Assembly (NCBI RefSeq): GCF_006345805.1
Contig: NC_042998.1
Coordinates: 86,056,001-86,120,000 of the forward strand
Length of the DNA: 64,000 nt
Direction of reading: 5' to 3'
From: Octopus sinensis
Taxonomy: Eukaryota
The number at the start of each line of letters is the position of its first letter. The first letter of the stretch is position 1. Both the position numbers and the translations under genes were made by a program. Positions 1-59,125 of this stretch are shown one piece after another. The notes beneath the pieces were generated by a model. It was given only the letters and a program-made list of their open reading frames with translations, did not search any database and was not told the origin of the DNA.

Positions 1-1084
1 AATAAATAATGAAAATGAAATAAAATAAATAAAAAACAAAACAGCATTGTTGATAAGGGCATTTTCATTTATCTTTATTTATAAAACTTGTAGTCACTCA
101 GTTGAAAATGGGATGAGACATAAAATGATAAAAAGTTCATTGGTTAATTGAGAATATAGGCCCATTTGAGAGCACACTGTCTGAGAGTGGTGGTAGACTA
201 AAGTAAACACAGAAGGTTTTGCACTTGGTGACTATAAATGAGATGGGGAGGAAAGAGAATTTTGTACAAAATTTAGTCATGTCGACTGAAAAGTGTCAGA
301 TATGAGAATTCTTGGACATTAGTATAGATTTTCTTGATAACAAATGAGAAATCTCAGGTGCAATTTCGAAAGTGGAATATCTTGCAGATTGTATGAAGTC
401 ACAAGTGAAAATCAAGTGTGAAGATTTCAGCTTTCCCTTGAATTGAGTTACAGTTTGAATAATTGCAGCAACAGCCTGAACCTTGCTAAAAGCATCTAAA
501 TATCCAGAAACTGGTTTAAAATCGAGCAGCATGTTATGTTTACTATTTCAAAAGTAGACTGTTTTTATCATGATACCAGTGATAGAGAGGTTGTTTTGAA
601 GGACTTGGAACATCATCTTTCAGAGGAAGGTTCTTCATTTTTGAGTAATGAAGCATCTAGGTGGTCTGCTTTATTGTAGAGATCATGTCTCTCTTGAGGT
701 GAATCACTATTGTAGGACGTATTAGGTTTACAGTATTTCCAGAGATATAGTGTAAAACAAAGTAAACTAGAAGTGGATTTGAAAATGAACCAATATTTCC
801 TCAAGGACCAATAAAATGAATCTTAACAAATAAAGTGTTGTATTAAAGAAAAGTGGTGTGAAAATGCAAAAGTATATTGGTATAGTGTATCAGATGAAGC
901 ATCAATAGCTCAGAGTTAGCTTAAATTATTAAAAAGGGAAAAGGCAGTGAATATGATTTGATTGGTTAGAAAGAAATGGAAAATAGTTGATCAAGAGAAA
1001 GAAGCATGACAAAGACTGTAAAAATGATAAGAAACACAAAGTAGATATAATTTAACTGTAGTTCTGTAGTTGCAGGGTGTTGGT

Positions 1085-1449
1085 GAATAAAGCGTTATAT
1101 ATCATTGCCAGACAGCTGACTGGCTTCCGTGCTGGTGGCATATGAAAAAACATTCGAGCGAGGTCGTTGCCTGTGCCACTGGACTGGCACCTGTGCAGGT
1201 GGCACATAAAAAACACCATTTGAGCGTGGCCGTTGCCAGTACTGCCTGACTGGCCCTCATGCCGGTGGCACGTAAAAGCACCCACTACACTCCTAGAGTG
1301 ATTGGCGTTAGGAAGGGCATCCAGCTGTAGAAACTCTGCCGGATCAGATTGGAGCCTGGTGCAGCCATCTGGTTCGCCAGTCCTCAGTCAAATCGTCCAA
1401 CCCATGCTAGCATGGAAAGCGGACATTAAATGATGATGATGATGATGAT
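1085..1449 (+). mobile_element. Abundant SINE-like element with RTE-related 3' end and (GAT)n tail
   Basis: Contains the family core ggaagggcatccagctgtagaaac...catgctagcatggaaagcggac followed by (tga)n. The same family recurs many times in the window, and the duplicate is at about 50420-50780. Confidence 0.85.
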
Positions 1450-2374
1450 ATATTCAGTATCTAAGCAGTGTGTAAGTTGCATTTATAGCTATACAGCCAT
1501 GAATTTTACCATCATACTTTCACTAAAGAGTTGTTTAGTTCAGCAGTTTATTGTTTTAAATGAATTATTAGATTCATGGCCTTCTATTTATTTTTTCCCT
1601 TTTTTTGAGATAAGCATTATGTAATACCTACTTTGAGTATCATTATGTATGATACTAGTTAAGGCAGTGAGCTGGCAGAATCATTACTAGACCTAACAAA
1701 ATGCTTGGCAGCATTTCTTCCAGCCTCCAGATTCAAATTCAGCTGAAGTTGACTTTGTCTTTCGTCCTTTTATTATTGATGAGATAATTACCAGTTGAGC
1801 ATTGGGGTTGATGTAATCGGTTAGCCACCTTTCCCCTAAAATTTCAGGGCTTGTGTATACAGTAGGAAGAATTATGTATGATACTGGTATATGCATTATT
1901 TCTTTGTGGCTTTTATTGAGAATTTTGATTATATTTACAGAGGAGTTTTCATTTGTTTTACCCTTACTAAAGTAATGTTTGACAATTGCAAAAAGTATGG
2001 TAGGAAGATGAATAAATTTAATGTTTTGTTGGAATATTTGAAAATGTGAGCCTGAGAAGATAAAAACAGGCAAAGAAGGGGTGCTTAAAGGAAGCATATC
2101 TGAGGAGGAAGGATTTCAAAATCTGTTTTGTTTGAAGTATAGAGTAAGTTAAGTTGGATGAGGTACTTTTAGCCAACTTGGTGAGAATCAGAGAGTGTGA
2201 TATTATTAACAATGATATAGAGAGAATATAACTTGATAATTGGGAGAAGAGTATTGTTGAATTAAGGTTTTGCTTATATTTTGCCTGTATCAGATATATG
2301 TACTATTATTTATGTATTTATAATAAAACATTAATTTCTTGAATAGGAACATAATTCTTTGTATTATTTTGTAG

Positions 2375-2407
2375 AACGGATTTGTTGAGTTTACTCCTGA
2401 GTTTACG
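2375..2407 (+). CDS. Cadherin module copy A, 33-nt microexon (NGFVEFTPEFT), part of EC1
   Basis: ttttgtag acceptor and ACG|gtaaga donor, phase 0/0. It fills the gap between ...IDREEVP and DGSVGN... in frame. A paralogous exon lies at 51704-51736. Confidence 0.8.
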
Positions 2408-2454
2408 GTAAGAATATATACTTCTAATACTTAACTTTTTAAGAGTGGCCTGTT

Positions 2455-2977
2455 GTCATCATCATCTTCATTGTCATCATCATCATAATCATCGTCACCA
2501 CCACCACCACCACCTTCCTCCTCCTCCTTCTCATCATCATCATCATCATTAACATCTGTTGACCATGCTGGCATTCATATGATGGTTTGACCAGTGCTGG
2601 TAAGCTGAGGTACTGCACTAGACTCAAGTCTGATTTGGCATGGTTTCTGTGACTGGATGCCCTTCCTAAAGCCAACCACTCTGAGAGTGTAATGGGTGCA
2701 TTTATGTGCCACCAGCATGGGTGCCAGTTGCATGACACCATATCTGTCATGACTAAGATTCCACAGGACTTGATGGTTCATCTTCTCAAGCATATTGCCA
2801 AAAGTCTTGGTCATTTGTCATTGCCTCCATGAGGCCCAACACTCAAAAGGTGCTTTTTACTTATCACATGCACAGGTGCCAGTTACGTGACATCAGCATC
2901 AAACACATGATTTCACTTGGCCTGATGGGTTTTCTCAAGCACAGCATATCACCAAATGTCTCGGTTATTAGCCATTG
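2455..2977 (-). mobile_element. SINE/RTE 3'-end fragment
   Basis: (cat)n, then the ggatgcccttccta core and the RTE-type 3' segment gtcattgcctccatgaggcccaac. Confidence 0.7.
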
Positions 2978-3024
2978 TCAGTAAGGTGAGAATTAACACC
3001 TTGTAGAGTTATATATATATATTT

Positions 3025-3360
3025 CATCATCATCATCATCATCGTTTAACGTCTGCTTTCCATGCTAGCATGGGTTGGACGATTTGACTGAGGTCTGGCG
3101 AACCAGATGGCTGCACCAGGCTCCAATCTGATCTGGCAGAGTTTCTACAGCTGGATGCCCTTCCTAATGCCAATCACTCCAAGAGTATAATGGGTGCTTT
3201 TACGTGCCACCGGCACGAGGACCAGTCAGGCAGTACTGGCAACGACCATGCTCAAATGGTGCTTTTTATGTGCCACCTGCACAGGAGCCAGTCCAGCGGC
3301 ACTGGCAATGACCTTGCTTGAATGTTTTTTCATGTGCCTCCAGCACAAGTGCCAGTAAGG
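3025..3360 (-). mobile_element. SINE-like element, inverted relative to 1085-1449
   Basis: Reverse complement of 1135-1445 at roughly 90% identity over about 310 bp. Confidence 0.85.
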
Positions 3361-3399
3361 CGATGCAGGTAACGATCATATATATATATATGTATATTA

Positions 3400-4535
3400 T
3401 ATCATCATCATCATCATTTTGCATCCATTTTCTATGCTGGCATGGGTTCGACAGTTTGGCATGTAGCTGGCCAGCTGGCAGCTGTCCAGACTCCAGTTGT
3501 CTGTTGCGGCATGGTTTCTATGGCTCGCCTTTCCTTATGCCAATCACTTAACAGAGTGTGCTGGATGTGCATTTTACATGTTACCAGCATAAGTGCATTT
3601 ACACAGCACCAGCACAGGTGCTTTTTTATGTGGCCCCTGGAGGTGTCTGAAGCTTCTATGTGTGGAAGACAGCATTTTACTTAACTTGACATGTCTTATC
3701 AAGAATAGCAAATTGCTACATCTCCTTTGTCATTGCCTCAGTGAGGCCCATCTTCCAAAGATCTTTTCTCACCACTTTGTCCCACGTATTCTTGGATCTA
3801 CCCCTCCCGCAGGTACCCTTCACAATTAGAGCTTAGCACTTCTTTACACACTTGTCCTCATCCATACACATCACTTGACCAAACCAGTGCAGTCTTCTCT
3901 CTTGCACACAGCATCCGATGCCTCTTATATCCAGTTTCCCTCTTGAATCATATACACTCTGTTGTGTATGCACATTGACATGACTCATCCAGTGGGGAAT
4001 GCTAGCTTCCTTTCTTTCAAGCTTTCAGAAGTCCTCTGTAGTCAAAGTACGTTTCACTGCCATGTAACATAGCTGTACATACACAGGCATCATACAATCT
4101 GCTTTTCACTCTGAGAGAGAGGCCCTTAGTTATCAACAAAGATAGAAGCTCTCTGAACTTTGCCCAGCCTATTCTTATTGTAGCAACTACACTTTCAGAA
4201 TTTTCTCCACCACTGCTAACTTGGTCTTTTAGGTAAAAGAAGTTATCTACTACTTGTAATGAGTCCCCCGAGTGTTTGAGGGAATCTGTTGCTTGTAGAT
4301 TATTAGCGCTTATTGTACCTGCACATTTGCCTCACACAAAGACTCTATTCTCCATTAACCTTCCTGTGATGCCACTTCACTTCTTATATGTCCAAAGCTT
4401 GCACTGGGTACAACACATGGAATTTATCCCAACACCCTTCTTACATAACAAGGAGAACCATCTCCCAGACGGGACTTGTGAATTATCTGTTGAGTCAAGT
4501 AAAACCAAAATTGTAGTTGTGGCCAGTGTCCTCTA
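3400..4535 (-). mobile_element. RTE-clade LINE 3' fragment with SINE-like tail, degenerate
   Basis: Homologous to the 3' part of the RTE at 32200-33100 (Cys-rich segment, DSFxYLGD, MLHGSETW region). The duplicate is at about 55420-56555. Confidence 0.75.
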
Positions 4536-4539
4536 ACTG

Positions 4540-5120
4540 GTTCCGGTGCCAGAGGCAAATAAAATGCACCATCCAAACTTGGATCCGAACATAATCAAAG
4601 CCAGCAACACCTGACTGGTCCCTGTGCCGGTGTCACGTAAAAAGCACCATCAGAATGTGGCTGATGCCAGTACCCTCTGACTGGCTCCCTTGCCAGTCAC
4701 ACGTAAAAAGTACCATCCAAATATGGCTGATGCCAGTACCCCTGACTTGCTCCTTTGGCGGTGGCATGTAAAAAGCACTATCCTAATGTGATCAATGCCA
4801 GGACTGCCTGACTGGCCCCCATGTTGGTGGCACCTGAAAAGCACCATCCGAACGTGGCCAATGCCAGTACCCCATGACTGGCCCCATGCTGGTGGTACAT
4901 AAAAAGCACTATCCAAACATGATCAATGCCTGGCCTGCTTGACTAGCTCCTGTGTTGGTGGCATGTAAAAAGCACTCTCAGAGTGGTTGGTATTAGGAAG
5001 CGCATCCAGCTATAGAAACATTGTTAGATCAGATTGGAGCCTGGTGCTGGCTCTCTGGACCTCAGTCAAACCATCCAACCTATGCCAGCATGGAAAATGG
5101 ACTTTAAACGATGATGATGA
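4540..5120 (+). mobile_element. SINE-like element with internal degenerate tandem units of about 60 bp
   Basis: Repeated ...gtaaaaagcaccatcc...gccagtaccc units, then the family core and a (gat)n tail. The duplicate is at about 56560-57150. Confidence 0.75.
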
Positions 5121-5940
5121 TCTGTTATTCTCACTGCTGCTGTTGCTTTTGTTCAATGTCCTTTGTTTACATCTTCCTGGAAAACTTTCTTTAAAATCTT
5201 ATAACCAGCTTTGTTAGTAAAGTTTTGGATTTTGAAAAAAAATTTTGTTCTGCTCTTGCTTTTTGAAGTTAGTTTTACTAAAACATTTTCCAGATTGATA
5301 TTTGAGCACTATTTCTTAAACTTAAATGTAACATTGAAAAGTAGAGGTGGGGCATTGCCCTCCATTGCCCCTTTCTTTCCAGTGCCACCTTGGATCTTTC
5401 CACCCCACCGAGAGGAGTGGTATTGCCCATTTTGGAAACTACTGGTTTAACCAATACATTAAACAAATGATCATTAGTTTGATAGATAGATATTTAAATA
5501 ATTGACTAAGTATAAAGAAGTGGAATTGAACCTGAATGTGTGTTGTTCTTATCGGCAGATTGACTCTCCCAAGATAGAACTAAATATATTGAGAAGTAAT
5601 GTTTGTCACCACTTCAATATAGCTGTTCTGTATGAACTGACATTACTACCATTCTTTAACCCCCAAGAGGAAGTCTCCTCTAGTAATCTGCACCTAATAT
5701 AATTTGCAAGCAAAGGTGTGAACCTCTACCATCTTTATGTGACTTGACAGAACCAGCAGACTGTCTGGTTTTGGGCTACTTTTGCCTATCCTCAGTGCTG
5801 GATACCTGTCTGCTAGTGACAGCAGTAATTCCCCCCAGTTCGCAACATATAGAAAAATAAGCGACAATCAGTCACTGATCTTGCAACAAGCAAAGTAACT
5901 AGTTAGAAAATCTTTGCAAGAGATGAAATGAGTAATTATA

Positions 5941-6076
5941 CTGAGAAGTAATGTTTGTTGCCACTGCAACATGGCTGTTCCAAATGAACTGGTGTTACTA
6001 CCATTTTTAACCCCAAGAGGAAGCCCCCTTTGTGTAGAACAGCCATCTTGAAGTGGCAATAAACATTACTTCTCAG
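5941..6076. mobile_element. Tc1/mariner-type MITE, 136 bp
   Basis: Terminal inverted repeats ctgagaagtaatgtttgttgccac / gtggcaataaacattacttctcag (1 mismatch), flanked by TA. A truncated relative lies at about 5550-5690 and the duplicate at 57974-58109. Confidence 0.7.
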
Positions 6077-6389
6077 TATAGTCACTACTTTCATCTCTTA
6101 CAGAGATTTCCCAACTAGCTATTTTGCTTGTGAAAAATATATATTGTTATTCAAAATTAATTTGACTTATCCTTTATATTATTAACAGCAGTGATAAAAT
6201 AAGTTCCGATAATGTAATTTATAATGAGTTCATACAAATGATTGCAAAACTGTTGAATTATCATATGCATGCTTTTTTGTGATGTAAAAATACTTATATT
6301 GAAGAGAAGCTTACACATCAACAAGATCAAATTCATGTTCTTGAAATTGTATGGAATTATAACATTTGATATCTGTTTTTTAAATTCAG

Positions 6390-6488
6390 GATGGCTCAGT
6401 AGGTAATATATGTTTCTTAATAATTCTTGATGAAAATGATAATGTTCCAGTTTTCGGAAGTCAACGATATAAAGCAACAATACCAGAG
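6390..6488 (+). CDS. Cadherin module copy A exon, EC1/EC2 linker (DGSVGNICFLIILDENDNVPVFGSQRYKATIPE)
   Basis: taaattcag acceptor, GAG|gtaaga donor, 99 nt, phase 0/0. Contains the DxNDNxPxF calcium-binding linker and the xPE motif. Confidence 0.93.
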
Positions 6489-7020
6489 GTAAGAATTTGA
6501 CATTTTCTTTCAAAAGATTCTCTCTCATTCTCCCTCTCTCTTGTTAATGCTTCATGGAAGTGAAGTATTGAACATGACTGCAGAAGGCATAAGAATACTT
6601 GAAAGAAATGAGATGCGCATGCATGCTCTACTGGATGTGTCAGATTAATGTACATGTATGACAAAGTGCAAATGTGCTGAGAGAAAAATTGGGCAAAAGA
6701 GGTACCAGATGTGGTGTACAAAAGAGAAGACTGCTGATATGGTCTTGTGATGGGTATGGATGAGCACAGCTGCATAAAGAAGTACAGACTGTTGAATGTG
6801 GATGGAACTTATGAAAGAAGACGATTCAGGAAAACATGAAATGAAGTAGTGAAGACCAGTGTCAGGTTGTTGAACCTTGCATAAAAGACTGAGCTGATTA
6901 GAGATTCAGTGTGCTCAAGAAGCCTCATCAATCTCATAAAAAAATGAGGTCAAACAGTCAAACTGTCTAACCCATGCTAGCATGGAAAGTGGACATTAAA
7001 TGATGATGATGATGGTGATG

Positions 7021-7053
<33 letters not shown>

Positions 7054-7934
7054 GCATCAGGTAACCATCTGAGTAAGGATTATGTTGAAATCATAAGATG
7101 CAGCATGGTAGATGTGAACTATTTTGGTAGATGAACTTATTGAATCAATGATGAATATCACTGGATGGCGAGCAGAGGAACGCCCAACAAACTGACAGCC
7201 AGAATCAGTTTCCTTAGATTTTATTCTAAATACAGATTCTGCTTTGTTGACTGCTTCAGTGCACAGTCTGAATTGTTGATATGCCTACATTTAATGTTCC
7301 TTTTTAATTTTGGACATCAACTAGACAATGGCAGCCTTTAATGAAGCTACATTATTATGAAGATGGATATTAGTGTCTCTTTCATCATCATTATCATCAT
7401 CATCATGATCATCATCATCTTTCAGTGTCTGATTCCATACTGGCATGGATCGGATGATTTGACAAGAGTTGGCCTTGGCTCCATTTGTCTGTTCTGGCAT
7501 GATTTCTATTTAGCCACTTTTATATGCTTCTATATGGCACCAGCACATAGGACTGGCACAGGCACTTCTACATACCACTGGCACAAGTGCTTTTATATGA
7601 CACTGGCAATGGTGCTTTTACATAACATTGGCATGGACACTTTTACATGGCACCACCAAAGGTACTTTTATGCGAAACTAGCACCCACAAGTCTGCAAGA
7701 CTAGGATTTCTTGGCTGAGAGAGAGATGCAGAAGATATGCCTATAGGCATGGACGGCCTTAGTTTTACTTAGCTTAGCATGTTTTCTCAAGCTGGCCACC
7801 TGTCATCTCCTCTTTGAGGCCCAACATCTGAAGATTCTTTCTCACCACTTCATCCATGTCTTCTTGGATCTGCCCCTTCCACATGTTCCCTCCATAATTA
7901 GAGATCTTCACTTCTTGATGCAGCTTTCCTCATC

Positions 7935-8915
7935 CATTGCTCCAAATGTAGTGATCCATGAGATTTAAATCTGGCAAGTTTGGAGGCCACAAGTTTGGTG
8001 TTACATGATTGTAACGATTGACTGACATTCATTCTTGGGTTATATGAATTTGAAAGAAAGTGCTGAGTCTATTGAAGTACATGTGGCTTTCTATTGCATA
8101 CTTAATCCACCTAGGACTTAACAGATCTATCTCCAGCAGCTCAATGTATACTATAGTATTAACTCTAAAATCCTGTCAAAAGATGTGAGGTGGAATGACA
8201 TGGCATTCACCACTAAGCATTCCTAAATTCATCGCAATTGCTGGAAACTTGGTGTGCATCATTCAATGAAAACAGAAGGATCTGCACTTAACCATCAGGA
8301 ATTGGAATTTTTCCTGTTAGACTTTTGGCTGTGGATGAAGATTTTTTCATCAGAGAAGAATCAAAGCATGCCATATTTGTAAGGGTTTTAACCTTGTTAA
8401 GTAACCACTTGGCAAGGATCAAAGGATTTTTCTGTGTCTTTGCAGACATCAATTGGCCTCTCCTCAGTACTTGTATCGAATGTCCTCATGCACCAGTTTT
8501 GATAGTCTGTTCTGACACCTAAAGTTTTTTGGCAATAGCCCTCATAGATTTTGTGGAATCATCATCAATAATGTTTTGAACCCATTGGATGAATTGCAGT
8601 GTCGTTATAGTGTAAAAATGTTTAGAATGCTTTTTTCTCTTTGATACGTTTGAAACATCCCTGCCAGAGTCTTCCATTTCTATTTGAACTTTACGTGCAA
8701 AGATCTTGCAACATGTAGAAAGCTGGTAATTTCTACATTGATGCATTCCACATATATCGCAGCAATAACTGCATATCTTTTCATTTTTTGTGTCAGCACT
8801 TTATCTACCATGGATAATAGGAAAGAAATAAAATTCTTTTAATTGATTAAGAGAATAATAAACTGATAATTATTTAGTGTCCTGAAATACTTCTCACACC
8901 CATTGTATATTAGAT
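7935..8915 (-). mobile_element. Degenerate DD37D/maT-like (Tc1/mariner superfamily) transposon
   Basis: The minus strand encodes WPPNLPDLN-like and IIDDDSTKSMRAIAKKL segments, with stops and frameshifts. The duplicate is at about 60685-61640. Confidence 0.65.
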
Positions 8916-8989
8916 TGGTAAGGAAGCTCTGTTGCATTTCAAGATAGAAAAGTAAATAATTATTTGGTTTTAATTGATATTTTTTTCAA

Positions 8990-9870
8990 GATAGTATATT
9001 CTCTCATTCTTGATAACATAATTCCAATCATTTGGGTGAAAACTTTTCAAGTTTCATTTTTAAGCTGATCACAATTGTTAGATATTTATAGATTGTTTTC
9101 ACTCTAATAAATGTTGCAATGGTCTGAAAAGATAATAGAGGAACAAAATCGGTAGAGTAAGGATGGTGAGGTAAACTTCCATATTTAAGGCAGTAATCCT
9201 TTCATGAATGACTTCAGTAGGATATGATTTTGTGTTATTATGTTGGAGCAACACCTCTGTACATTTGATTAATGAGGAATACCTTTGCTGCAATTTTTTT
9301 GTGTGCAATGCTTCCACCTGATAACAGTATTCCTCTGCATTTTACTTTAACACTTAATAGTATAAAACATCCTTTATACCCAACCAAACAGAGCACATTT
9401 TTAGCTGTTGTAAATGTTTGAGGATGGATTCTCTTTTTTCATTTTTGTTAAATATAATTATAGAAAACCAACTTTTCACCACCTGTGATGATTCTATCCA
9501 GGAAAGGTTTTGTAGGTAGTCTACTCTTCAATAATGAGCAGAAAACAACTTTATGATTAAGCTGATAAGCAGTCAAGTGATGAGGCACCCATTAACCAAA
9601 TTTAGATACTTTTCCTAGTTCATGCAAGTGTTTTGTGATCAAAATGTGACTTCACTTGAACTGTTTTGTCAATTTTCATGTAGTTTCCCTTGGGTTTTCT
9701 CAACTATGGTTTCCAGAAGCTCAATATTGACAGAACATGGTCATGCAGATCAAGGAAATATGTGAAAGAAATATTTCCTGAGTAAAACTGGCCAAACCAT
9801 CATTGGAATGTCCAGACACTTCAAGCTTTGTTTTCACAGACAGAATGAATATTTCTTGTTTCCATTGCTT
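8990..9870 (-). mobile_element. Degenerate mariner transposase remnant
   Basis: Minus-strand LLQHNNTKSY (for QHDNARPH) and, in the duplicate at 61837-62052, EVLPHHPYSTDFVPS (for HPPYSPDLAPS). Confidence 0.7.
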
Positions 9871-10251
9871 CTTTTGAATTCATACAATATGCAGTGTCTG
9901 TTAGGGGTCTGATCTAAACTAATTTTAAAAGGTAAAATAAATCATACAAATTTAACCATTATATTATAAAGTAATCTGTGAAGAATAAAGCATTAAAGTG
10001 TAAAACTTAATGTTTATTTGACAATAAGTATTGAAAAAGTACCCTGAAGTGATTGTGTTAAAAATGTTACAGGACCTTCTTTCTGACCTAATGTTTATAC
10101 ATGTATTGCTTTCATAGCAAAGACATTTGTGGTAGGGGGGAATTGTTTTCTGAAATGTGTCATCTTTATCATAGAATGAATTAATATGAAAACTAGTGAA
10201 AAAAAATATTTGCTGAATTATATTTTCTTAATATTTTGCTTTTTTTTGCAG

Positions 10252-10338
10252 GATTTTCCAGTAAACACTAAAATACCAAATTTGCAGATAACAGCTACTG
10301 ATGCTGATGAAAATCCCAATCTAGAATATTCTTTGATA
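10252..10338 (+). CDS. Cadherin module copy A exon, EC2 (DFPVNTKIPNLQITATDADENPNLEYSLI)
   Basis: tttttttgcag acceptor, ATA|gtaagg donor, 87 nt, phase 0/0. Contains the AxDxD and Y-S-L cadherin motifs. Confidence 0.93.
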
Positions 10339-11830
10339 GTAAGGATACTGGTTTATTTTTTGCTTTATACTCACAAGTCATTCAATGTATTTTAACATGA
10401 AAGTAACTAAATTAAACCAACCTGTACTTTAGGAAGTTTCACTTTCCCAAGATGATTCTTAATACAATTTACTGAGACCAAATTCATAGGTTACTGCTTT
10501 GATACACAGCCTTCATAACTGATGTAATCATAAGAATTGCTTCATGCTTGTGTTTCGTCTAAGTTGGTCTCAATGGTTTAAGTCTACTTAACAGTAGATA
10601 GTTACCATGGACATGGGGACATGGGTTGCATTGTTTACTGGTGTAAACTGATGATTTTGTTTGTTGTCTGCAGTTCTGAGTTAATTTCCTCTGGTTAGCA
10701 GGCAATTTTAAATACAGTGGGACTTAATCCTAAAAGAGATTTAGCTTTTACCTACATAATGTTATAGAAACAACAATGGAACATTTGCTCTGTGGAGTCT
10801 TGAACTACGAAAATGAAGATGAATAATTTGCTCAGCCAAATTTTGATACACCTATCTCTGTCCCTCTATACTTTTAATCAGTCAAATGGCACAAAGCTGC
10901 ACCCAGTCAATACTATTTCTCCCAGCATGGAAAACAGACTTTGAATAATGATGATGATGATGGTATCTATGTATATGGTTCATATATGTATGTGTGTGTC
11001 TACACACACATATAATTGTCTGTAAAGTCACAAGAGGGACTGAAGGATGACAAGTTTAGTGCATGTCATATATCAGATTAACCAAAATCATGAATCCACT
11101 CTTTATATTGGAATGATTGATCAAAAATTGTTTTAAGCTGGACATTTAGACACATGCACACACTTCTATCATTTTTCTTGCCATTCCATATACCTCACTA
11201 ATTTCTTCTCTTACTAAAGCAGAAAAATAATTTCCTTCCTTGTACAGTGTTACTTTTTCTTTTTCCATTTTTTTTTCATTTCATCTCTCATTTCTCTATT
11301 AACACCATTTCACACCAATACCCTTACACACACTATTCACATTCCTCCTACCTTCTTTCCACCCTCACACTTGCACCCACTGCTACCTCCTCACTTCTAT
11401 ATTTTACTTGCTCACAATATAATTACTCATGTACACCAACCATCCGCATATCTCCGCTATCCCATGCCATTACATCCAACACTTATATTTTGCCAATATA
11501 AGAAATTATTATTAGTATAATTTTTTGATGATAACTAGATTTTGGGTTACTTGTCAAATGTCTGGTAATAACATGTTACAAAAGCTGTCATGAAGGTTTC
11601 TCAAAGTTTTTTTCAATTTTATTTAGGCCTTAAGTTAAAAACAGATTTAGTTTTGTCTTATTAAATAAGATGTTGCAGCAAATAATATTCATAACTGTCT
11701 GAAAACCAACTCTTTTAATGCACACCTCTGAGTTTCATTGTCTTAAAATATCTTCTCATCTTAAAAAATATCTTTTGTATTATTCCTGTTATTCACTATT
11801 CTTATAAATGTTTATTTGTTTCAATTTCAG

Positions 11831-11842
11831 CCTGCTGGCCAG
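11831..11842 (+). CDS. Putative 12-nt microexon (PAGQ) in EC2 of copy A
   Basis: Pyrimidine-rich tttatttgtttcaatttcag acceptor and a perfect CAG|gtgagt donor, phase 0/0. It lies in order between ...YSLI and NSKGIED.... The frame is also kept if it is skipped, so it is not strictly required. Confidence 0.6.
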
Positions 11843-13563: not shown

Positions 13564-13565
<2 letters not shown>

Positions 13566-26885: not shown

Positions 26886-27005
26886 AATTCAAAAGGAATT
26901 GAAGACTACATGAAAATTGAAGATAAATATAAAGGTTTCATCACAGTAGTAAAAGCACTGGACTATGAAACAAGAAACTTTTTTGAATATACAGTACAAG
27001 TATTT
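26886..27005 (+). CDS. Cadherin module copy A exon, EC2 (NSKGIEDYMKIEDKYKGFITVVKALDYETRNFFEYTVQVF)
   Basis: ttttcttttacttgtag acceptor, TTT|gtaagt donor, 120 nt, phase 0/0. Contains the G-x-I-x-V and LDYE motifs. Confidence 0.93.
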
Positions 27006-41090: not shown

Positions 41091-41207
41091 GATGGAAAGT
41101 TTACAACAAATGCTTCTGTATGGATCCAAGTTGAGGATGTTCAAGATATGCCACCAGCATTTACAAGTTCCGGCTTTGTTGAAAAAATCAAGGAAAATTC
41201 AAACAAG
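41091..41207 (+). CDS. Cadherin module copy A exon, EC2/EC3 linker (DGKFTTNASVWIQVEDVQDMPPAFTSSGFVEKIKENSNK)
   Basis: ttaatttcag acceptor, AAG|gtaata donor, 117 nt, phase 0/0. Contains the DVQDxPPxF linker and the EN motif. Confidence 0.93.
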
Positions 41208-44790: not shown

Positions 44791-44869
44791 GGAACTCTCA
44801 TCACTACAGTGACAGCTGAAGATCAAGACAGAGGCATACCGAATGATATTGGTTATGAAATTATTAAAG
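44791..44869 (+). CDS. Cadherin module copy A, last visible exon, start of EC3 (GTLITTVTAEDQDRGIPNDIGYEIIK+G)
   Basis: ttttcatttcacag acceptor, AAAG|gtataa donor, 79 nt, phase 0/1. Contains the AxDxDxG and Y-x-I motifs. Confidence 0.9.
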
Positions 44870-45260
44870 GTATAATTTCTAAGATTTATTCTCTAAATCT
44901 TGAAATAAAACAAAAATGCAATACTGTGCTGTATTTATTCAAAGTATTTAGTATATATGTACATATATGTATCCATGTGCCTACATGCATACCAGAATAT
45001 ATATATATATATTTAAAGAGATGATGAGCGATTGCTAGAAGAATATTGAGCTTTATTTGATAATCAGTTGGTCTAGCAAGCAGGGCCTCATATTAGTGAG
45101 TGGGGCCTGTGCACGTTGATGCTGTCGAGAGGTAGGCCCCCAAATGGCATGCATTCTCTCTTGATGACCCCATACACTTGCTGCCTTCTGGTATGCAGAG
45201 TTCTCGACTGGTAGCACTTGCATGTGTATGTTGTTTGCAAGACATATATATGTATGTATG

Positions 45261-45289
<29 letters not shown>

Positions 45290-45293
<4 letters not shown>

Positions 45294-45550
45294 GACGCAC
45301 ATAAAAAACACCATTTGAGTGTGGCCATTGCCAGTACCGCCTGACCGGCCCTCGTGCCAGTGGCACATAAAAGCACCCACTACACTCTCGGAGTGGTTGG
45401 TGTTAGGAAGGGCATCCAGCTGTAGAAACTCTGCCAGATCATGATTGGACCCTGGTGCAGCCATGTGGTTCGCCAGTCCTCAGTCAAATCGTCCAACCCC
45501 TGCTAGCATGGAAAGCGGACGCTAAACGATGATGATAATGATGATGATGA
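45290..45550 (+). mobile_element. SINE-like element
   Basis: Same family as 1085-1449, with a (gat)n tail. Confidence 0.85.
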
Positions 45551-46148
45551 TATATATATATATATATATCAATTTAATAAAGTTACAACATGGTCTGGTT
45601 TTCATGTTTTTTATTATTGTATTTTTAAAATGTTCTTTTTACAATGTTGTAGTGTGTTAAGCATTAAAAAAATATTTTGTAATGTTCATAAAGTCAAATT
45701 AGTGCTTCTATATTTTGAGTTGAGTGCTTGATAATTGTAGTAAAATGACTGGCTTCTTGCTTTTTATACCTTCTAGAAGGCTCCAACAAGCTGAATTTTT
45801 GGAATATGGTTTTGACCAATCAGCATGCCACTTAAATGTCATGGTATGCCAGGCACACCGATATTACTAGCATAGATCCCACTTTTATTTTAAACAATTA
45901 GCTTGTGGTTTACATGTAATGGCTTCACAAGTGAGCAAACCTAGCTGATTTTGATTGTTTTTATATAAGTTGGTGGGAGTCTTCTGTAATTTGTTTATAT
46001 TTATATGTTAAAGATATTTTTTAATCCACATCACTAACTGGTTGTTATTATTGAAGTCTTTATTATTTTTTTTATCTTCTGCTGGTCTTAAACTATAAAA
46101 AGTTCTACATATCTAAATTAAAAATAATTTTAAAAAATTGATCAAATA

Positions 46149-46481: not shown

Positions 46482-46535
46482 CTACCACCAGTGATTTGCC
46501 TCAACAAATAGAAGTAAAGGAAAATCAAAACGCTG
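46482..46535 (+). CDS. Cadherin module copy B, first visible exon, start of EC1 (x-TTSDLPQQIEVKENQNA-G)
   Basis: tttcttttgttatgtcag acceptor, GCTG|gtaagg donor, 54 nt, phase 1/1. The V-x-EN-xxx-G motif joins in frame to 49118. Confidence 0.8.
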
Positions 46536-49117: not shown

Positions 49118-49290
49118 GCACTGTTGTTGTAACTGTTGAAGTGACTGGAAACAATTTCCCTAAATTAATTTTAGTGGGAGATATACTGAACTATTTAAAA
49201 GTAGTAGATAATCCTTCTTGTACTAATACTGCATCATGTAACAAGTTTGATTTGGTTACCATAAAAAAAATTGACAGAGAAGAAGTTCCG
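49118..49290 (+). CDS. Cadherin module copy B exon, EC1 (GTVVVTVEVTGNNFPKLILVGDILNYLKVVDNPSCTNTASCNKFDLVTIKKIDREEVP)
   Basis: ttttctttttcag acceptor, CCG|gtatgt donor, 173 nt, phase 1/0. Contains the GTVV and IDRE motifs. Confidence 0.9.
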
Positions 49291-51703
49291 GTATGTACAA
49301 AACTTCTTGAAATAATTTCCACATGCTGACATTAATAAATAATGAAAATAAAATAAAATGAATAAAAAACAAAACAGCATTGTTGATAAGGGCATTTTCA
49401 TTTATCTTTATTTATAAAACTTGTAGTCACTCAGTTGAAAATGGGATGAGACATAAAATGATAAAAAGTTCATTGGTTAATTGAGAATATAGGCCCATTT
49501 GAGAGCACACTGTCTGAGAGTGGTGGTAGACTAAAGTAAACACAGAAGGTTTTGCACTGGTGACTATAAATGAGATGGGGAGGAAAGAGAATTTTGTACA
49601 AAATTTAGTCATGTCGACTGAAAAGTGTCAGATATGAGAATTCTTGGATATTAGTATAGATTTTCTTGATAACAAATGAGAAATCTCAGGTGCAATTTCG
49701 AAAGTGCAATATCTTGCAGATTGTATGAAGTCACAAGTGAAAATCAAGTGTGAAGATTTCAGCTTTCCCTTGAATTGAGTTACAGTTTGAATAATTGCAG
49801 CAACAGCCTGGACCTTGCTAAAAGCATCTAAATATCCAGAAACTGGTTTAAAATCGAGCAGCATGTTATGTTTACTATTTCAAAAGTAGACTGTTTTTAT
49901 CATGATACCAGTGATAGAGAGGTTGTTTTGAAGGACTTGGAACATCCTCTTTCAGAGGAAGGTTCTTTTTCATTTTTGAGTAATGAAGCATCTAGGTGGT
50001 CTGCTTTATTGTAGAGATCATGTCTCTCTTGAGGTGAATCACTATTGTAGGAAGTATTAGGTTTACAGTATTTCCAGAGATATAGTGTAAAACAAAGTAA
50101 ACTAGAAGTGGATTTGAAAATGAACCAATATTTCCTCAAGGACCAATAAAATGAATCTTAACAAATAAAGTGTTGTATTAAAGAAAAGTGGTGTGAAAAT
50201 GCAAAAGTATATCGGTATAGTGTATCAGATGAAGCATCAATAGCTCAGAGTTAGCTTAAATTATTAAAAAGGGAAAAGGCAGTGAATATGATTTGATTGG
50301 TTAGAAAGAAATGGAAAATAGTTGATCAAGAGAAAGAAGCATGACAAAGACTGTAAAAATGATAAGAAACACAAAGTAGATATAATTTAACTGTAGTTCT
50401 GTAGTTGCAGGGTGTTGGTGAATAAAGCGTTATATATCATTGCCAGACAGCTGACTGGCTTCCATGCTGGTGGCATATGAAAAAACATTCGAGCGAGGTC
50501 GTTGCCTGTGCCACTGGACTGGCGCCTGTGCAGGTGGCACATAAAAAACACCATTTGAGCGTGGCCGTTGCCAGTACTGCCTGACTGGCCCTCATGCCGG
50601 TGGCACGTAAAAGCACCCACTACACTCCTAGAGTGATTGGCGTTAGGAAGGGCATCCAGCTGTAGAAACTCTGCCAGATCAGTTTGGAGCCTGGTGCAGC
50701 CATCTGGTTCGCCAGTCCTCAGTCAAATTGTCCAACACATGCTAGCATGGAAAGCAGACGTTAAATGATGATGATGATATATTCAGTATCTAGGCAGTGT
50801 GTAAGTTGCATTTATAGCTATACAGCCATGGTTTTTACCATCATACTTTCACTAAACAGTTGTTTAGTTCAGCAGTTTATTGTTTTAAATGAATTATTAG
50901 ATTCACTGCCTTCTATTTATTTTTTCCCTTTTTTTGAGATAAGCATTATGTAATACCTACTTTGAGTATCATTATGTATGATACTAGTTAATGTAGTGAA
51001 CTGGCAGAATCATTACTAGACCTAACAAAATGTTTGGCAGCCTTTCTTCCAGCCTCCAGATTCAAATTCAGCTGAAGTTGACTTTGTCTTTCGTCCTTTT
51101 ATCATTGATGAGATAATTACCAGTTGAGCATTGGGGTTGATGTAATCGGTTAGCCACCTTTCCCCTAAAATTTCAGGGCTTGTGTCTACAGTAGGAAGAA
51201 TTATGTATGATACTGGTATATGTATTATTTCTTTGTGGCTTTTATTGAGAATTTTGATTATATTTACAGAGGAGTTTTCATTTGTTTTACCCTTACTAAA
51301 GTAATGTTTGACAATTGCAAAAAGTATGGTTGGAAGATGAATAAAGTTAATGTTTTGTTGGAATATTTGAAAATGTGAGGCTGAGAAGATAAAAACAGGC
51401 AAAGAAGGGGTGCTTAAAGGAAGCATATCTGGGGAGGAAGGATTTCAAAAACTATTTTGTTTGAAGTATAGGGTAAGTTAAGTTGGATGAGGTACTTTTA
51501 GCCAACTTGGTGAGAATCAGAGAGTGTGATATTATTAACAATGACATAGAGAGAATATAACTTGATAATTGGGAGAAGAGTATTGTTGAATTAAGGTTTT
51601 GCTAATATTTTGCCTGTATCAGATATATGTACTGTTATTTATGTATTTATAATAAAACATTAATTTCTTGAATAGGAACATAATTCTTCGTATTATTTTG
51701 CAG

Positions 51704-51736
51704 AACGGATATGTTGGGTTTACTCCTGAGTTTACG
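51704..51736 (+). CDS. Cadherin module copy B, 33-nt microexon (NGYVGFTPEFT)
   Basis: ttttgcag acceptor and ACG|gtaaga donor. Paralog of 2375-2407. Confidence 0.8.
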
Positions 51737-52469
51737 GTAAGAATATATACTTCTAATACTTAACTTTTTAAGAGTGGCCTGTTGTCATCATCATCTTCAT
51801 TGTCATCATCATCATAATCATTGTCACCACCACCACCACCTTCCTCCTCCTCCTTCTCATCATCATCATCATCATTAACATCTGTTGACCATGCTGGCAT
51901 TCATATGATGGTTTGACCAGTGCTGGTAAGCTGAGGTACTGCACTAGACTCAAGTCTGATTTGGCATGGTTTCTGTGACTGGATGCCCTTCCTAAAGCCA
52001 ACCACTCTGAGAGTGTAATGGGTGCATTTATGTGTCACCAGCATGGGTGCCAGTTGCATGACACCATATCTGTCATGACTAAGATTCCACAGGACTTGAT
52101 GGTTCATCTTCTCAAGCATATTGCCAAAAGTCTTGCTCATTTGTCATTGCCTCCATGAGGCCCAACACTCAAAAGGTGCTTTTTACTTATCACATGCACA
52201 GGTACCAGTTACGTGACATCAGCATCAAACACATGATTTCACTTGGCCTGATGGGTTTTCTCAAGCACAGCATATCACCAAATGTCTTGGTGATTAGCCA
52301 TTGCTTCCATGAAGCCCAGTGTTTGAAAATCATGCTTCACCACCTCGTTCCATGTCTTCCTGGGCCTACCTCTTCCACAGTTTCCCCCCACAGTTAGAGG
52401 TCAGCACTTCTTTACACAACTGTCCTCGTCCATACACATCTTAAATTTTTGTTAATACTTGGAGGTCTA

Positions 52470-53738
52470 CGAGGGGCGTTCAATAAGTAATGCCCCTGAC
52501 CCACTTCCCATAGCAGTAGAGCAACGACACTTGGCACAGTTATTAGTCTTTTCCTACATAGGAACTACCCAGAGTTATGCATTTCTCCCATCGTTTGATA
52601 CAGCTCTGGAGACCGTTTTTGTAGAAGACCCCAGCTTGGTCCTCCAACCACGACGTGACTTCAGAAATCAAGTCTGCATCATCTGGGAAATGCTTTCCTT
52701 TCAAAATCAACTTCATGGCTGGGAAGAGGTGAAAATCAGAGGGTGCAAGGGGAGGAGTTCATAGCTGCATGCCTGTGCTTCTGATCTGGCGACACGCGAG
52801 TTGTGGACCGGAGCGTTGTCCTGCAGGAGGAGGATGCCTTTGCTGATCTTGCCCCGCCTCATGATTTTGATAGCTTCTCTTAATTTCCTCAAAAGTGAAG
52901 AATAATAGGCTCCTGTAATTGTGGTACCCTTTGCCAGGAAATCTGTCATCACTACTCCGTCCTGGTCCCAGAAGACTGTGAGCATAACCTTGCCAGCGGA
53001 GGGCTGCACCCTTGCCTTCTTTGGAGGAGGTGAGTCACGGTGCTTTCACTGCATTAACTGGGCTTTGGTCTATGGATCATAGTGATGGACCCAGGTTTTA
53101 TCCTGTGTGATCAGTCTTTTGAAAATTTTGACTCATCTTCTTGGCACATCTCCAAATTCATCCTCGAGCACTCAATGCGTTCTTGCTTCTGGAAAGGTGT
53201 GAGCAACCTGGAAATCCATCTGGCAGACACCTTTTGCATATGCAAATGGTCATGAATGATAGTTTCCACAGACCCAGTACTAATCTTGACCTTATGGGCT
53301 ATTTGGCGAATAGTTATGTGTTGACCTTCCAAAATGGCAGCCTCAACTTGACGGACAGACGTCTCATCAACGGCAGAAGGGGGCGACCAGATCTGGGAGC
53401 TGTTTCCACAGAGTTCCGACTATGTTTGAATTCACAATGCCAGCGTTTTACAAGTTCATATGATGAGGCATCATCACCATAAGTTACTTTCATTTCATCA
53501 AAAGTCTCCCGTGGTGTGCATCCTTTCAAATACAAAAACCAGATCACTGCTCGACACTCAACAGGCTCCATTTCACACTTGACTCAGTTCAAACACCTGT
53601 AAATCAGAAACCACAATAAGTTCAGAGCTGTAATTCGCCACTTAATCTATAGCAGTATAAATAAGTGCACATGCAAAATTTCAGCTAGATCAAACAACTG
53701 CAAGTGGGTGGGGAGCATTACTTATTGAACGCCCCTCG
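52470..53738 (-). mobile_element. Near full-length mariner transposon (1269 bp) with frameshifted transposase; copy B only
   Basis: Perfect 24-bp TIR cgaggggcgttcaataagtaatgc with TA on both sides. ORF pieces read MEPVECRAVIWFLYLKG, SARWISRLL, KVMLTVFWD and LLQDNAPVH. Confidence 0.92.
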
Positions 53739-58246: not shown

Positions 58247-58577
58247 GTAATTTATAATGAGTTCATACAAATGATTACAAAACTGTTGAATGATTGCAAA
58301 ATTGTAATTTATAATGAGTTCATACAAATGATTGCAAAACTGTTGAATGATTGCAAAATTGTAATTTATAATGAGTTCATACAAATGATTGCAAAACTGT
58401 TGAATGATTGCAAAATTGTAATTTATAATGAGTTCATACAAATGATTGCAAAACTGTTGAATGATTGCAAAATTGTAATTTATAATGAGTTCATACAAAT
58501 GATTACAAAACTGTTGAATGATTGCAAAATTGTAATTTATAATGAGTTCATCCAAATGATTGCAAAACTGTTGAATT
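58247..58577. repeat. 57-bp minisatellite, 5 full units plus 1 partial; copy B only
   Basis: Units start at 58247, 58304, 58361, 58418, 58475 and 58532. Copy A has the sequence once (about 6215-6259). Confidence 0.95.
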
Positions 58578-58590
58578 ATCATATGCATGC

Positions 58591-59004: not shown

Positions 59005-59125
59005 ATGCTTTTTTGTGATGTAAAAATACTTATATTGAAGAGAAGCTTACACATCAACAAGATCAAATTCATGTTCTTGAAATTGCATGGAATTATAACA
59101 TTCGATATCTGTTTTTTAAATTCAG

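What the first reader, a model, noticed from the sequence alone, without database searches (positions are those of the whole stretch)
2375..10338. Exons diverge faster than introns between the copies: 14 of 15 exon changes are non-synonymous
Counted from the sequence. The 33-nt exon has 2 changes (F>Y, E>G). The 99-nt exon has 6 (G>N by 2 nt, F>Y, I>K, Q>H, and one silent GAT>GAC). The 87-nt exon has 7 (P>T, T>N, K>T, E>H by 2 nt, N>T, E>K). Total: 15 of 219 nt (6.8%) and 12 of 73 amino acids. By eye, introns differ far less: about 3 substitutions plus 1 indel in about 500 bp at 40-540, and about 6 plus 1 indel in about 330 bp around the 87-nt exon. The calcium-binding motifs (DENDN, PE-D, DAD) and all splice GT/AG dinucleotides are unchanged. 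Inference: diversifying selection on a recognition surface at EC1-EC2, as in self/non-self or immune-type receptors. Caveats: the 14:1 ratio alone is only modestly above neutral expectation, so the exon-versus-intron excess carries the signal. Exon-limited gene conversion from a third paralog could mimic it.
Basis: partly seen in the sequence, partly recalled or inferred. Interest (0 to 1): 0.85.

Follow-up and report, generated by a model that had tools for sequence, protein, structure and literature searches.

The report
Fast-evolving octopus protocadherin adhesion domains
Two tandem copies of the front end of an octopus cell-adhesion (protocadherin-like) gene differ about four times more in their exons than in their introns, almost entirely by amino-acid changes. 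This is a clear but familiar sign of selection for new binding surfaces.

Summary
Copy A (window 1-11237) and copy B (49334-64000) differ at 15 of 219 exon bases (6.8%) against 173 of 10,976 non-exon bases (1.58%; p=3e-6). Of the 15 changes, 14 are non-synonymous, and all splice sites and Ca-binding motifs are intact.

The DNA comes from the Octopus vulgaris/sinensis complex. The three exons encode EC1 strands F-G, the EC1-EC2 linker and the first half of EC2 of a protocadherin-like receptor.

Four more copies fetched from O. sinensis and O. vulgaris show the same pattern. Over three independent sister pairs pN=6.2%, pS=1.3% and intron divergence=1.1% (omega 4.7, p=5.5e-4). Every exon indel in the window and its closest relatives is a multiple of 3. 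Positive diversifying selection is therefore the best explanation. Short conversions or recurrent hits may account for about 6 of the 15 changes.

The repeated unit is not a whole gene. It is a 49-kb block of exons 1-8, with no signal-peptide exon and no 3' exons between the copies. How B is expressed is unknown.

Selection of this kind is known for vertebrate clustered protocadherins. I found no report of it for octopus.

The parts
1..11237 (+). Copy A of the duplicated segment. It is cut by the window start and is the 5' part of cassette A from within intron 2 onward.
   Evidence: Aligns to 49334-64000 at 97-98% identity in three blocks. It is 98.35% identical to O. vulgaris L006 51838-64158.
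49334..64000 (+). Copy B of the duplicated segment, cut by the window end. Start-to-start period is 49,333 bp.
2375..2407 (+). Cassette A exon 3 (33 nt, NGFVEFTPEFT), encoding the EC1 F strand. Two changes relative to B (F>Y, E>G).
   Evidence: AG/GT sites and frame. Matches P0001-P0004. Strand assignment comes from the AF2 model of P0002, residues 99-106.
6390..6488 (+). Cassette A exon 4 (99 nt), encoding the EC1 FG loop, the G strand, the DENDNVPVF linker and the start of EC2. Six changes relative to B, five of them non-synonymous.
10252..10338 (+). Cassette A exon 5 (87 nt), encoding the EC2 A-B loop, B strand, the DAD Ca-binding loop and the C strand. Seven changes relative to B, all non-synonymous.
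11831..11842 (+). Cassette A 12-nt microexon (PAGQ).
   Evidence: Context is TTTCAG|CCTGCTGGCCAG|GTGAGT. PAGQ is present in the homologue models P0001-P0005.
26886..27005 (+). Cassette A exon 6 (120 nt), encoding the second half of EC2, including the LDYE motif.
41091..41207 (+). Cassette A exon 7 (117 nt), encoding the end of EC2, the DVQD linker and the start of EC3.
   Evidence: homologous to L005 92988-93104
44791..44869 (+). Cassette A exon 8 (79 nt, ends in phase 1), encoding EC3 strands B-C. Its natural partner, exon 9 (DSCSAFSISND...), is not in the window.
   Evidence: The exon 8 to exon 9 junction is seen in P0017 and in the O. sinensis chromosome.
44968..46051 (.). Junction between cassette A and cassette B. 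Homology to the exon 8 flank stops at 44968, and homology to the exon 1 upstream flank starts at 46051-46323. The interval contains a SINE (45297-45581) and no signal-peptide exon.
46482..46535 (+). Cassette B exon 1 (54 nt, phase 1 to phase 1, (A)TTSDLPQQIEVKENQNAG), encoding the start of mature EC1.
49118..49290 (+). Cassette B exon 2 (173 nt), encoding EC1 strands B-E.
51704..51736 (+). Cassette B exon 3 (33 nt, NGYVGFTPEFT).
59126..59224 (+). Cassette B exon 4 (99 nt, DNSVGNICYLKILDENDN...).
62989..63075 (+). Cassette B exon 5 (87 nt, DFTVNNTIPNL...DADHNPTLKYSLI).

Best explanation
The window is octopus genomic DNA from the O. vulgaris/sinensis complex. It lies in a protocadherin-like gene family of the form signal peptide, six cadherin repeats, one transmembrane helix and a short tail. 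A 49.3-kb block holding exons 1-8 (EC1, EC2 and the first third of EC3) has been duplicated head-to-tail.

Since the duplication, introns and synonymous sites have drifted at the neutral rate of about 1.1-1.6%. Amino-acid-changing substitutions have been fixed 4-5 times faster at a limited set of positions:
- alternate residues of the EC1 F and G strands and the FG loop;
- the start of EC2;
- the EC2 A-B loop;
- the loop around the DxD calcium site.

Calcium ligands, core hydrophobic residues, splice sites and the reading frame are held constant. The most likely mechanism is positive diversifying selection for new binding specificities of the membrane-distal adhesion domains. Occasional very short conversions or recurrent hits reshuffle a few variants among copies.

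Shown: the duplication, the exon structure, exon divergence above intron divergence, dN above dS and above intron divergence in three independent pairs, in-frame-only exon indels, and the cadherin fold.
Inferred: that the variable residues are exposed and determine binding, and that cassette B is expressed.
For: - Exon 6.85% against non-exon 1.58% divergence between A and B, p=2.7e-6; empirical p=5e-4. Nd=14, Sd=1.
- The same pattern appears in copies C (L001), D (L002), D' (L005) and E (L006): flanking introns are nearly identical and exons carry clustered changes.
- Independent sister pairs A-B, C-E and D-D' sum to Nd 59.5/953, Sd 3.5/265 and intron 817/72,149. Omega is 4.7; Fisher p=5.5e-4 for pN>pS and 3.5e-25 for pN>intron; pS against intron p=0.55.
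- Counting each codon as one event gives 51 amino-acid-changing codons against 2 silent-only codons, p=2.8e-4.
- Exon indels in C are +3, +3, -12 and -3 nt. Only 4 of 24 A/B intron indels are multiples of 3.
- B carries 7 unique exon changes in 219 nt against 19 in 2,540 intron nt, p=0.0014.
- Variable positions recur across paralogues, with up to 4-5 residue states at the FG loop.
- Pfam Cadherin E=7e-15. The AF2 model has pLDDT 82-95 across EC1-EC2. Foldseek hits are to protocadherin, CDH23, CELSR and FAT EC pairs.
Against: - For A-B alone, pN>pS is not significant (p=0.12).
- At 6 of the 15 A/B differences B's base is shared with another copy, and AC|BD and AD|BC patterns coexist within 87 nt. 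Some differences may therefore be imported rather than new.
- No signal-peptide exon lies upstream of cassette B, and exon 9 onward is absent from the window. Expression of B as protein is unproven.
- No model coordinates were available, so surface exposure was not computed.
- No likelihood codon model was run.
- The window's species and the true copy number are unknown.
Confidence: 0.75

Rival explanations
1. Exon-limited gene conversion without selection. Short tracts copied from other cassettes or paralogues replace patches of exon sequence, because only exons keep enough homology across the family. This would inflate exon divergence between A and B.
For: At six of the 15 A/B sites B's state occurs in D/D' or C/E. 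Incompatible partitions occur within exon 5. Copy D is mosaic in intron divergence: about 2% around exons 2 and 5 but about 10% around exon 4, so conversion or recombination does operate in this family. Published work also invokes conversion in cephalopod PCDH arrays (PMC9068888).
Against: Synonymous divergence equals intron divergence (1.3% against 1.1%), whereas donors old enough to differ by 6-10% should bring silent differences too. Six to eight of the A/B changes are unique to B among six copies. B's exon 5 would need at least three separate micro-tracts in 70 nt. Conversion reshuffles variants but does not create them, and the orthologue pairs C-E and D-D' show the same excess of amino-acid changes.
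Confidence: 0.1
2. Old duplicates with homogenised introns. A and B are ancient paralogues whose non-coding DNA is kept similar by concerted evolution, while selection stops conversion from erasing exon differences.
For: A, B, C and E are all about 1.4-1.7% apart in introns whatever the species of origin, a star-like pattern that homogenisation could produce. The mosaic divergence of D points the same way.
Against: This predicts high synonymous divergence in exons. Observed pS is 2.1% for A-B and 1.3% over three pairs, the same as introns. Copy A has only one unique exon change, so the exon differences look recent and lineage-specific.
Confidence: 0.07
3. Assembly artefact. A and B are two haplotypes of one cassette stacked in tandem, so the differences are allelic. 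The exon excess would then reflect balancing selection on alleles.
For: A-B divergence (1.6%) is no greater than the between-species orthologue divergence (0.9-1.5%). The O. vulgaris and O. sinensis references have assembly gaps exactly where cassette homology breaks. Copy C sits on an unplaced 41-kb scaffold.
Against: The window has no N. The A-to-B junction is ordinary sequence containing a SINE. B carries a private 2.7-kb transposon and a private tandem array. One O. vulgaris chromosome already holds two distinct cassette types 620 kb apart. This rival would not remove the exon-over-intron excess in any case.
Confidence: 0.08

Closest known systems
Vertebrate clustered protocadherins (Pcdh alpha/beta/gamma). 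Diversifying selection on membrane-distal EC domains with gene conversion elsewhere: Wu 2005 Genetics and Noonan 2004 Genome Res, both as cited in PMC6339937 and PMC7811963; Xenopus analysis in PMC4978886.
   Same: Tandem head-to-tail arrays of closely related cadherin-repeat receptors. Adaptive amino-acid variation is concentrated in N-terminal EC domains, with homogenisation of other parts. Calcium-binding linkers are conserved.
   Different: Not orthologous; the octopus expansion is independent (PMC9068888). Here EC1 to part of EC3 is split over nine small exons spread across 49 kb, rather than one 2.4-kb variable exon. The fast-evolving region is EC1 plus the first half of EC2, not EC2/EC3. 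No constant-exon splicing has been shown.
Cephalopod protocadherin expansions (Albertin 2015, cited within PMC6339937; Albertin 2022, PMC9068888; Styfhals 2019, PMC6339937).
   Same: Same organism group and family type. The genes are multi-exonic and lie in same-orientation arrays of very similar copies, with recent duplication and gene conversion invoked. 'Fragmentary reading frames' have been noted in these clusters.
   Different: Those papers describe full-gene duplications and state that cephalopods do not splice alternative first exons to shared final exons. The unit here is a partial, exon 1-8 block. I found no dN/dS or exon-versus-intron analysis of octopus PCDHs in the searchable library.
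Chelicerate sDscam genes with tandemly arrayed multi-exon 5' cassettes (Yue et al. 2016, PMC4835542).
   Same: Tandem repeats of multi-exon cassettes that encode the variable N-terminal adhesion domains of a neuronal recognition receptor, lying upstream of a single set of 3' exons.
   Different: Ig domains, not cadherin repeats. Each sDscam cassette has its own promoter and its use is documented by RNA-seq and RACE. Here no promoter or signal-peptide exon was found for cassette B, and there are no RNA data.

Membership tests
Cadherin superfamily (extracellular cadherin repeats) | Sequence match to the Cadherin domain profile | tested here: met
   Pfam PF00028 E=7.1e-15, 55.6 bits (cut-off 28.8), on residues 114-208 of the spliced cassette. 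EC1 matches only weakly, which is usual for N-terminal repeats.
Cadherin superfamily (extracellular cadherin repeats) | Calcium-binding motifs at repeat junctions (PE, LDxE, DxNDN, DxD) | tested here: met
   IDRE, DENDNVPVF, IPE, DAD, LDYE and DVQD are read directly in the exons. D101/E120/D139 are invariant in a 43-sequence alignment.
Cadherin superfamily (extracellular cadherin repeats) | Two tandem seven-strand beta-sandwich repeats | tested here: met
   AF2 model of homologue P0002, 10-residue block means of pLDDT 82-95 over residues 21-210. Foldseek probability 1.00 to CDH23, CELSR1, Pcdh-gamma, PCDH10 and FAT4 EC pairs.
Protocadherin (non-classical cadherin: 6-7 EC repeats, one TM helix, no catenin-binding tail, no Trp2 strand swap) | Six or seven EC repeats followed by a single transmembrane helix | tested here: inconclusive
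   The 3' part is not in the window. In O. sinensis, exon 8 is followed by exon 9 onward. These exons encode further cadherin repeats and a hydrophobic segment, ITTVTVVLVFIFIITMLL (P0043/P0044). The count of six repeats is made by eye from motifs.
Protocadherin (non-classical cadherin: 6-7 EC repeats, one TM helix, no catenin-binding tail, no Trp2 strand swap) | No Trp2 or HAV classical-cadherin adhesion motif in EC1 | tested here: met
   Mature EC1 starts ATTSDLPQQIEV... and EC1 contains no Trp.
Vertebrate-type clustered Pcdh locus | The whole ectodomain, TM and proximal tail lie in one large variable exon, each with its own promoter, spliced to three constant exons | tested here: not met
   EC1 to the first part of EC3 is split into nine exons of 12-173 nt over about 49 kb. 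No first exon was found for cassette B.
Tandem 5' cassette array used alternatively (sDscam-like) | Two or more tandem cassettes upstream of one shared set of 3' exons | tested here: inconclusive
   Two cassettes are adjacent. Exon 8 of A is 1.6 kb from exon 1 of B, with exon 9 absent in between. The shared 3' exons lie outside the window.
Tandem 5' cassette array used alternatively (sDscam-like) | Each cassette is preceded by its own promoter or first exon, and cassette use in mRNA is mutually exclusive | not testable with these tools
   No RNA data. The signal-peptide exon seen in L002, L005 and L006 is absent upstream of cassette B.
Genes under positive diversifying selection | dN significantly above dS and above a neutral non-coding rate | tested here: met
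   Omega 4.7, p=5.5e-4; pN is 5.5 times intron divergence, p=3.5e-25; three independent pairs. The codon-event count is 51:2.
Genes under positive diversifying selection | Selected sites cluster on an exposed functional surface | tested here: inconclusive
   Variable sites follow an i, i+2 pattern on the F strand (99, 101) and G strand (116, 118) and include charged residues. They also fall in the FG, A-B and B-C loops. Solvent exposure could not be computed because coordinates are not returned.

The most novel reading that the evidence does not exclude
The octopus locus holds a tandem array of multi-exon 5' cassettes (EC1-EC2-part of EC3, exons 1-8). These cassettes share one upstream signal-peptide exon and one downstream set of exons (rest of EC3 to EC6, TM, tail) and are used alternatively. 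This would be a cadherin counterpart of chelicerate sDscam and vertebrate clustered Pcdh. It would contradict the published statement that cephalopods make PCDH diversity only by full gene duplication (PMC9068888). The selection signal on a cassette with no signal-peptide exon of its own, the tight duplication breakpoints around exon 1 and exon 8, and the matching phase 1 at both ends are all compatible with this reading.
Probability: 0.2. Interest if true: 0.8.

Novelty: new member of a known kind. Interest (0 to 1): 0.6.

Why it matters
Octopus protocadherin expansion is a textbook example of convergence with vertebrate neural recognition genes, but what the many copies do is unknown. This locus gives direct sequence evidence that very young copies are being pushed apart by selection. 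The changes fall in the membrane-distal domains EC1-EC2, and EC1-EC4 are the domains that set homophilic specificity in vertebrate protocadherins (my own knowledge of the structural literature, not checked here). That supports a recognition-code role and names specific residues to test.

The finding also flags a partial-gene (exon 1-8) tandem duplication. Current annotations split or miss this structure, and reference assemblies break at it. If the cassettes are used alternatively, the accepted view of how cephalopods generate protocadherin diversity would change.

Tried and rejected
- A 73-aa query made of the three exons found no homologue. A 309-aa spliced query was needed.
- Exact look-ups of P0001 and P0002 failed. 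Their longer isoforms P0073 and P0074 worked.
Coordinates are not returned, so no exposure calculation was possible.
- MAFFT alignments of fixed 300-nt flanks gave inflated intron divergence where the flanks are not homologous (A-B 5.7%, D pairs about 20%). I discarded them and used block alignments and BLAST-HSP chains.
- BLASTN without the dust filter flooded the output with microsatellite hits.
- I considered retro-conversion from A-to-I edited mRNA as a source of exon-only changes and rejected it. Only 4 of the 15 changes are A<->G, and 10 are transversions.
- I considered relaxed constraint or pseudogene decay and rejected it. Decay cannot exceed the intron rate, and frames and splice sites are intact.
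- I first read exon 8 of A joining exon 2 of B as one long EC domain of a giant cadherin. I rejected this once the homologue models showed the signal peptide and EC1 start.
- A search for a signal-peptide exon upstream of cassette B found nothing.
- Albertin et al. 2015 is not held in the library.

Full report
WHAT IS THERE. A self-comparison of the window and block alignments show one large direct duplication. It runs 1-2977 = 49334-52303, 3010-6258 = 55027-58291 and 6269-11237 = 59005-64000. Both window ends cut it, and the start-to-start period is 49,333 bp. Copy B carries a private 2.7-kb insertion (52304-55026) and a private stretch (58292-59004) that begins within a 57-bp tandem array. 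The two copies differ by 188 substitutions in 11,195 aligned bases.

THE OBSERVATION. They are 2375-2407 (33 nt), 6390-6488 (99 nt) and 10252-10338 (87 nt). In copy B they lie at 51704-51736, 59126-59224 and 62989-63075.

- Exon divergence is 15 substitutions in 219 nt (6.85%), giving 12 of 73 amino-acid differences.
- Nei-Gojobori counts are 14 non-synonymous and 1 synonymous.
- Everything else differs at 173 of 10,976 positions (1.58%), a 4.3-fold contrast (binomial p=2.7e-6).
- Three random non-exon intervals of the same sizes reach 15 substitutions in only 0.05% of draws.
- Exon changes are mostly transversions (5 transitions to 10 transversions). Non-coding changes are mostly transitions (115 to 58; p=0.02).
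- The main non-coding stretch of similar density is a SINE at about 3050-3310; smaller clusters lie near 1300 and 4450-4550.

WHAT THE GENE IS. A spliced query found Octopus sinensis and O. vulgaris 'protocadherin gamma-like / Fat-like' models at 74-83% identity. The window's non-coding DNA is 96-98% identical to loci from both species. The window therefore comes from that species complex.

Aligning those models to the window gives the exon map.

- Cassette B: exon 1 at 46482-46535 (54 nt, start of mature EC1) and exon 2 at 49118-49290 (173 nt), followed by the 33-, 99- and 87-nt exons.
- Cassette A: the 33-, 99- and 87-nt exons, then a 12-nt microexon at 11831-11842 (PAGQ), exon 6 at 26886-27005, exon 7 at 41091-41207 and exon 8 at 44791-44869.

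All of these have canonical splice sites and one continuous reading frame.

Pfam calls EC2 as a Cadherin domain (E=7e-15). An AlphaFold model of homologue P0002 is confident across both repeats (10-residue block means of pLDDT 82-95 over residues 21-210). It matches protocadherin, CDH23, CELSR and FAT EC pairs in the PDB.

- the 33-nt exon is the EC1 F strand;
- the 99-nt exon is the FG loop, the G strand, the DENDN linker and the start of EC2;
- the 87-nt exon is the EC2 A-B loop, the B strand, the DAD loop and the C strand.

THE REPEATED UNIT IS NOT A WHOLE GENE. On the O. sinensis chromosome the gene runs: signal-peptide exon, exons 1-8, then exon 9 onward. Exon 9 onward encodes the rest of EC3, further cadherin repeats, a transmembrane segment and a tail (P0043 and P0044). 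The annotation splits this into two 'genes'.

In the window, exon 8 of cassette A is followed only 1.6 kb later by exon 1 of cassette B.

- Homology to the exon 8 flank stops at 44968.
- Homology to the exon 1 upstream flank begins at 46051-46323.
- No signal-peptide exon and no exon 9 lie between them, or anywhere in the window.

Exon 8 ends in phase 1 and exon 1 starts in phase 1. Splicing exon 8 of A to exon 1 of B would therefore stay in frame, but it would place half an EC3 in front of a second EC1.

How cassette B is expressed cannot be decided from sequence. The options are a read-through, alternative cassette use with a shared signal-peptide exon and shared 3' exons, or no expression at all.

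REPLICATION IN OTHER COPIES. I fetched four further copies:

- C = L001, an O. sinensis scaffold;
- E = L006, O. vulgaris chromosome, 127.9 Mb;
- D = L002, the same O. vulgaris chromosome, 127.2 Mb;
- D' = L005, O. sinensis chromosome.

Four- and six-way alignments show the same picture everywhere. Intron flanks are nearly identical. Exon changes cluster at recurrent codons, with up to 4-5 residue states in the EC1 FG loop.

Exon indels in C are +3, +3, -12 and -3 nt, so the reading frame is preserved. Only 4 of 24 A/B intron indels are multiples of three.

Among A, B and C, intron divergence is 1.4-1.6% and exon divergence is 7-8%.

THE FORMAL TEST. A-B, C-E and D-D' are three non-overlapping sister pairs. 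The last two are orthologues between the two species. Summed over the three pairs:

| Class | Differences / sites | Divergence |
|---|---|---|
| Non-synonymous (pN) | 59.5 / 953 | 6.2% |
| Synonymous (pS) | 3.5 / 265 | 1.3% |
| Intron | 817 / 72,149 | 1.13% |

- Omega is 4.7 (Fisher p=5.5e-4).
- pN exceeds intron divergence 5.5-fold (p=3.5e-25).
- pS is indistinguishable from intron divergence (p=0.55).
- Counting each codon as a single event, to guard against multi-nucleotide mutations, gives 51 amino-acid-changing codons against 2 silent-only codons (p=2.8e-4).

Polarising the A/B differences with the other copies shows that A is the conservative copy, with 1 unique exon change. B has 7 unique changes in 219 nt against 19 in 2,540 intron nt (p=0.0014).

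INTERPRETATION. Relaxed constraint cannot push exons above the neutral rate. Ancient paralogues with homogenised introns, or conversion from distant paralogues, would both raise synonymous divergence, and that is not seen. Positive diversifying selection on amino-acid sequence is therefore the best explanation (confidence about 0.75).

Conversion or recurrent mutation does contribute. At six of the fifteen A/B sites B's base also occurs in D/D' or C/E. Both AC|BD and AD|BC partitions occur within the 87-nt exon. Copy D is mosaic in intron divergence.

The variable residues fall in these places:

- alternate positions of the EC1 F and G strands, including E/G/V/L at one position and I/K at another, which implies the exposed face;
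- the FG loop;
- the first residues of EC2;
- the EC2 A-B loop, where NTK, NNT and NIT variants gain or lose N-glycosylation sequons;
- the loop around the DxD calcium site.

That these residues form a binding surface is an inference. I could not compute exposure, and no assay exists.

COMPARISON WITH WHAT IS KNOWN. Adaptive diversification of membrane-distal EC domains, with conversion elsewhere, is established for vertebrate clustered protocadherins. The sources are Wu 2005 and Noonan 2004, as cited in PMC6339937 and PMC7811963, and PMC4978886.

The octopus PCDH expansion, its arrays of near-identical multi-exon genes and possible gene conversion are also published (PMC6339937; PMC9068888). 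I found no selection analysis of octopus PCDHs in the searchable library.

The finding is therefore a new member of a known kind. One feature departs from the literature. The duplicated unit is a partial exon 1-8 block, whereas PMC9068888 states that cephalopods diversify PCDHs by full gene duplication and not by splicing alternative 5' units to shared 3' exons. The nearest precedent for multi-exon 5' cassettes is chelicerate sDscam (PMC4835542). I give the alternative-cassette reading about 20%.

CAVEATS.
- The A-B pair alone does not give a significant dN/dS (p=0.12).
- I could not run likelihood codon models.
- The species of the window and the copy number are unknown.
- Both reference assemblies have gaps at this locus. 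A stacked-haplotype artefact therefore cannot be fully excluded, although it would not remove the exon-over-intron excess.

Noticed in passing
window 52304-55026: A 2.7-kb insertion present only in copy B. It carries decayed mariner/Tc1-like transposase ORFs on the minus strand: an HTH-like ORF at 53314-53571 and a DDE-like ORF at 52713-53009. Related copies occur in L003, L004 and L006.
   Followed up: partly
window 58246-58576 (and 58292-59004): A 57-bp tandem repeat of 5.8 copies at 98% identity, lying in the intron upstream of exon 4 of copy B. About 0.7 kb here has no counterpart in copy A (6259-6268).
   Followed up: partly
window 12298-18232: About 5.9 kb absent from the otherwise collinear O. 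sinensis scaffold L001. It contains reverse-transcriptase-like ORFs in both orientations (13896-15279 on the plus strand, 16338-17735 on the minus strand) and is GC-rich (0.49). It is probably a nested non-LTR retroelement insertion.
   Followed up: partly
window about 3050-3310 (copy B about 55070-55330): The main non-exon stretch where A and B differ as densely as in the exons, about 12 mostly transition substitutions in 100 nt; smaller clusters lie near 1300 and 4450-4550. It lies in a SINE-like repeat that has more than 10 copies in the window (for example 1129-1449, 37480-38550, 45297-45581 and 50465-50778). The cause may be CpG decay or exchange between SINE copies.
   Followed up: no
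window 44869 to 46482: The exon 8 donor of cassette A and the exon 1 acceptor of cassette B are both phase 1. The whole exon 1-8 unit is 774 nt (258 codons), so a read-through transcript would stay in frame (...GYEIIK|ATTSDLPQQ...).
   Followed up: partly
L005 about 75,520 (O. sinensis chromosome CM016860.1): Exon 6 of copy D' has a 1-nt deletion in a T6 run. This explains the frameshifted C-termini of the NCBI models P0001 and P0073. It is either a real pseudogenising change or a homopolymer assembly error.
   Followed up: partly
L006 84686-84785; L005 92844-92943; L003 1042-1141: Both reference assemblies have 100-N gaps inside this cassette. In L006 the gap sits where homology to the window stops. 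In L005 and L003 it sits just upstream of exon 7. The repeats are probably collapsed or misjoined there.
   Followed up: partly
window 46457-46481: The polypyrimidine tract and acceptor upstream of exon 1 read in frame as MNISFVMS(A). NCBI used this ATG as the start of model P0003. It could act as a weak alternative start or signal peptide, or it may be a by-product of the T-rich tract.
   Followed up: no
window 41747-41893 / 42241-42387 and 42879-43261 / 43790-44121: Two pairs of inverted repeats (97% and 87-90% identity) in the intron between exons 7 and 8 of cassette A.
   Followed up: no
window 37233-37516 and 39112-39218: Long microsatellite-like low-complexity arrays that cross-match each other and similar arrays in L002 and L005.
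   Followed up: no
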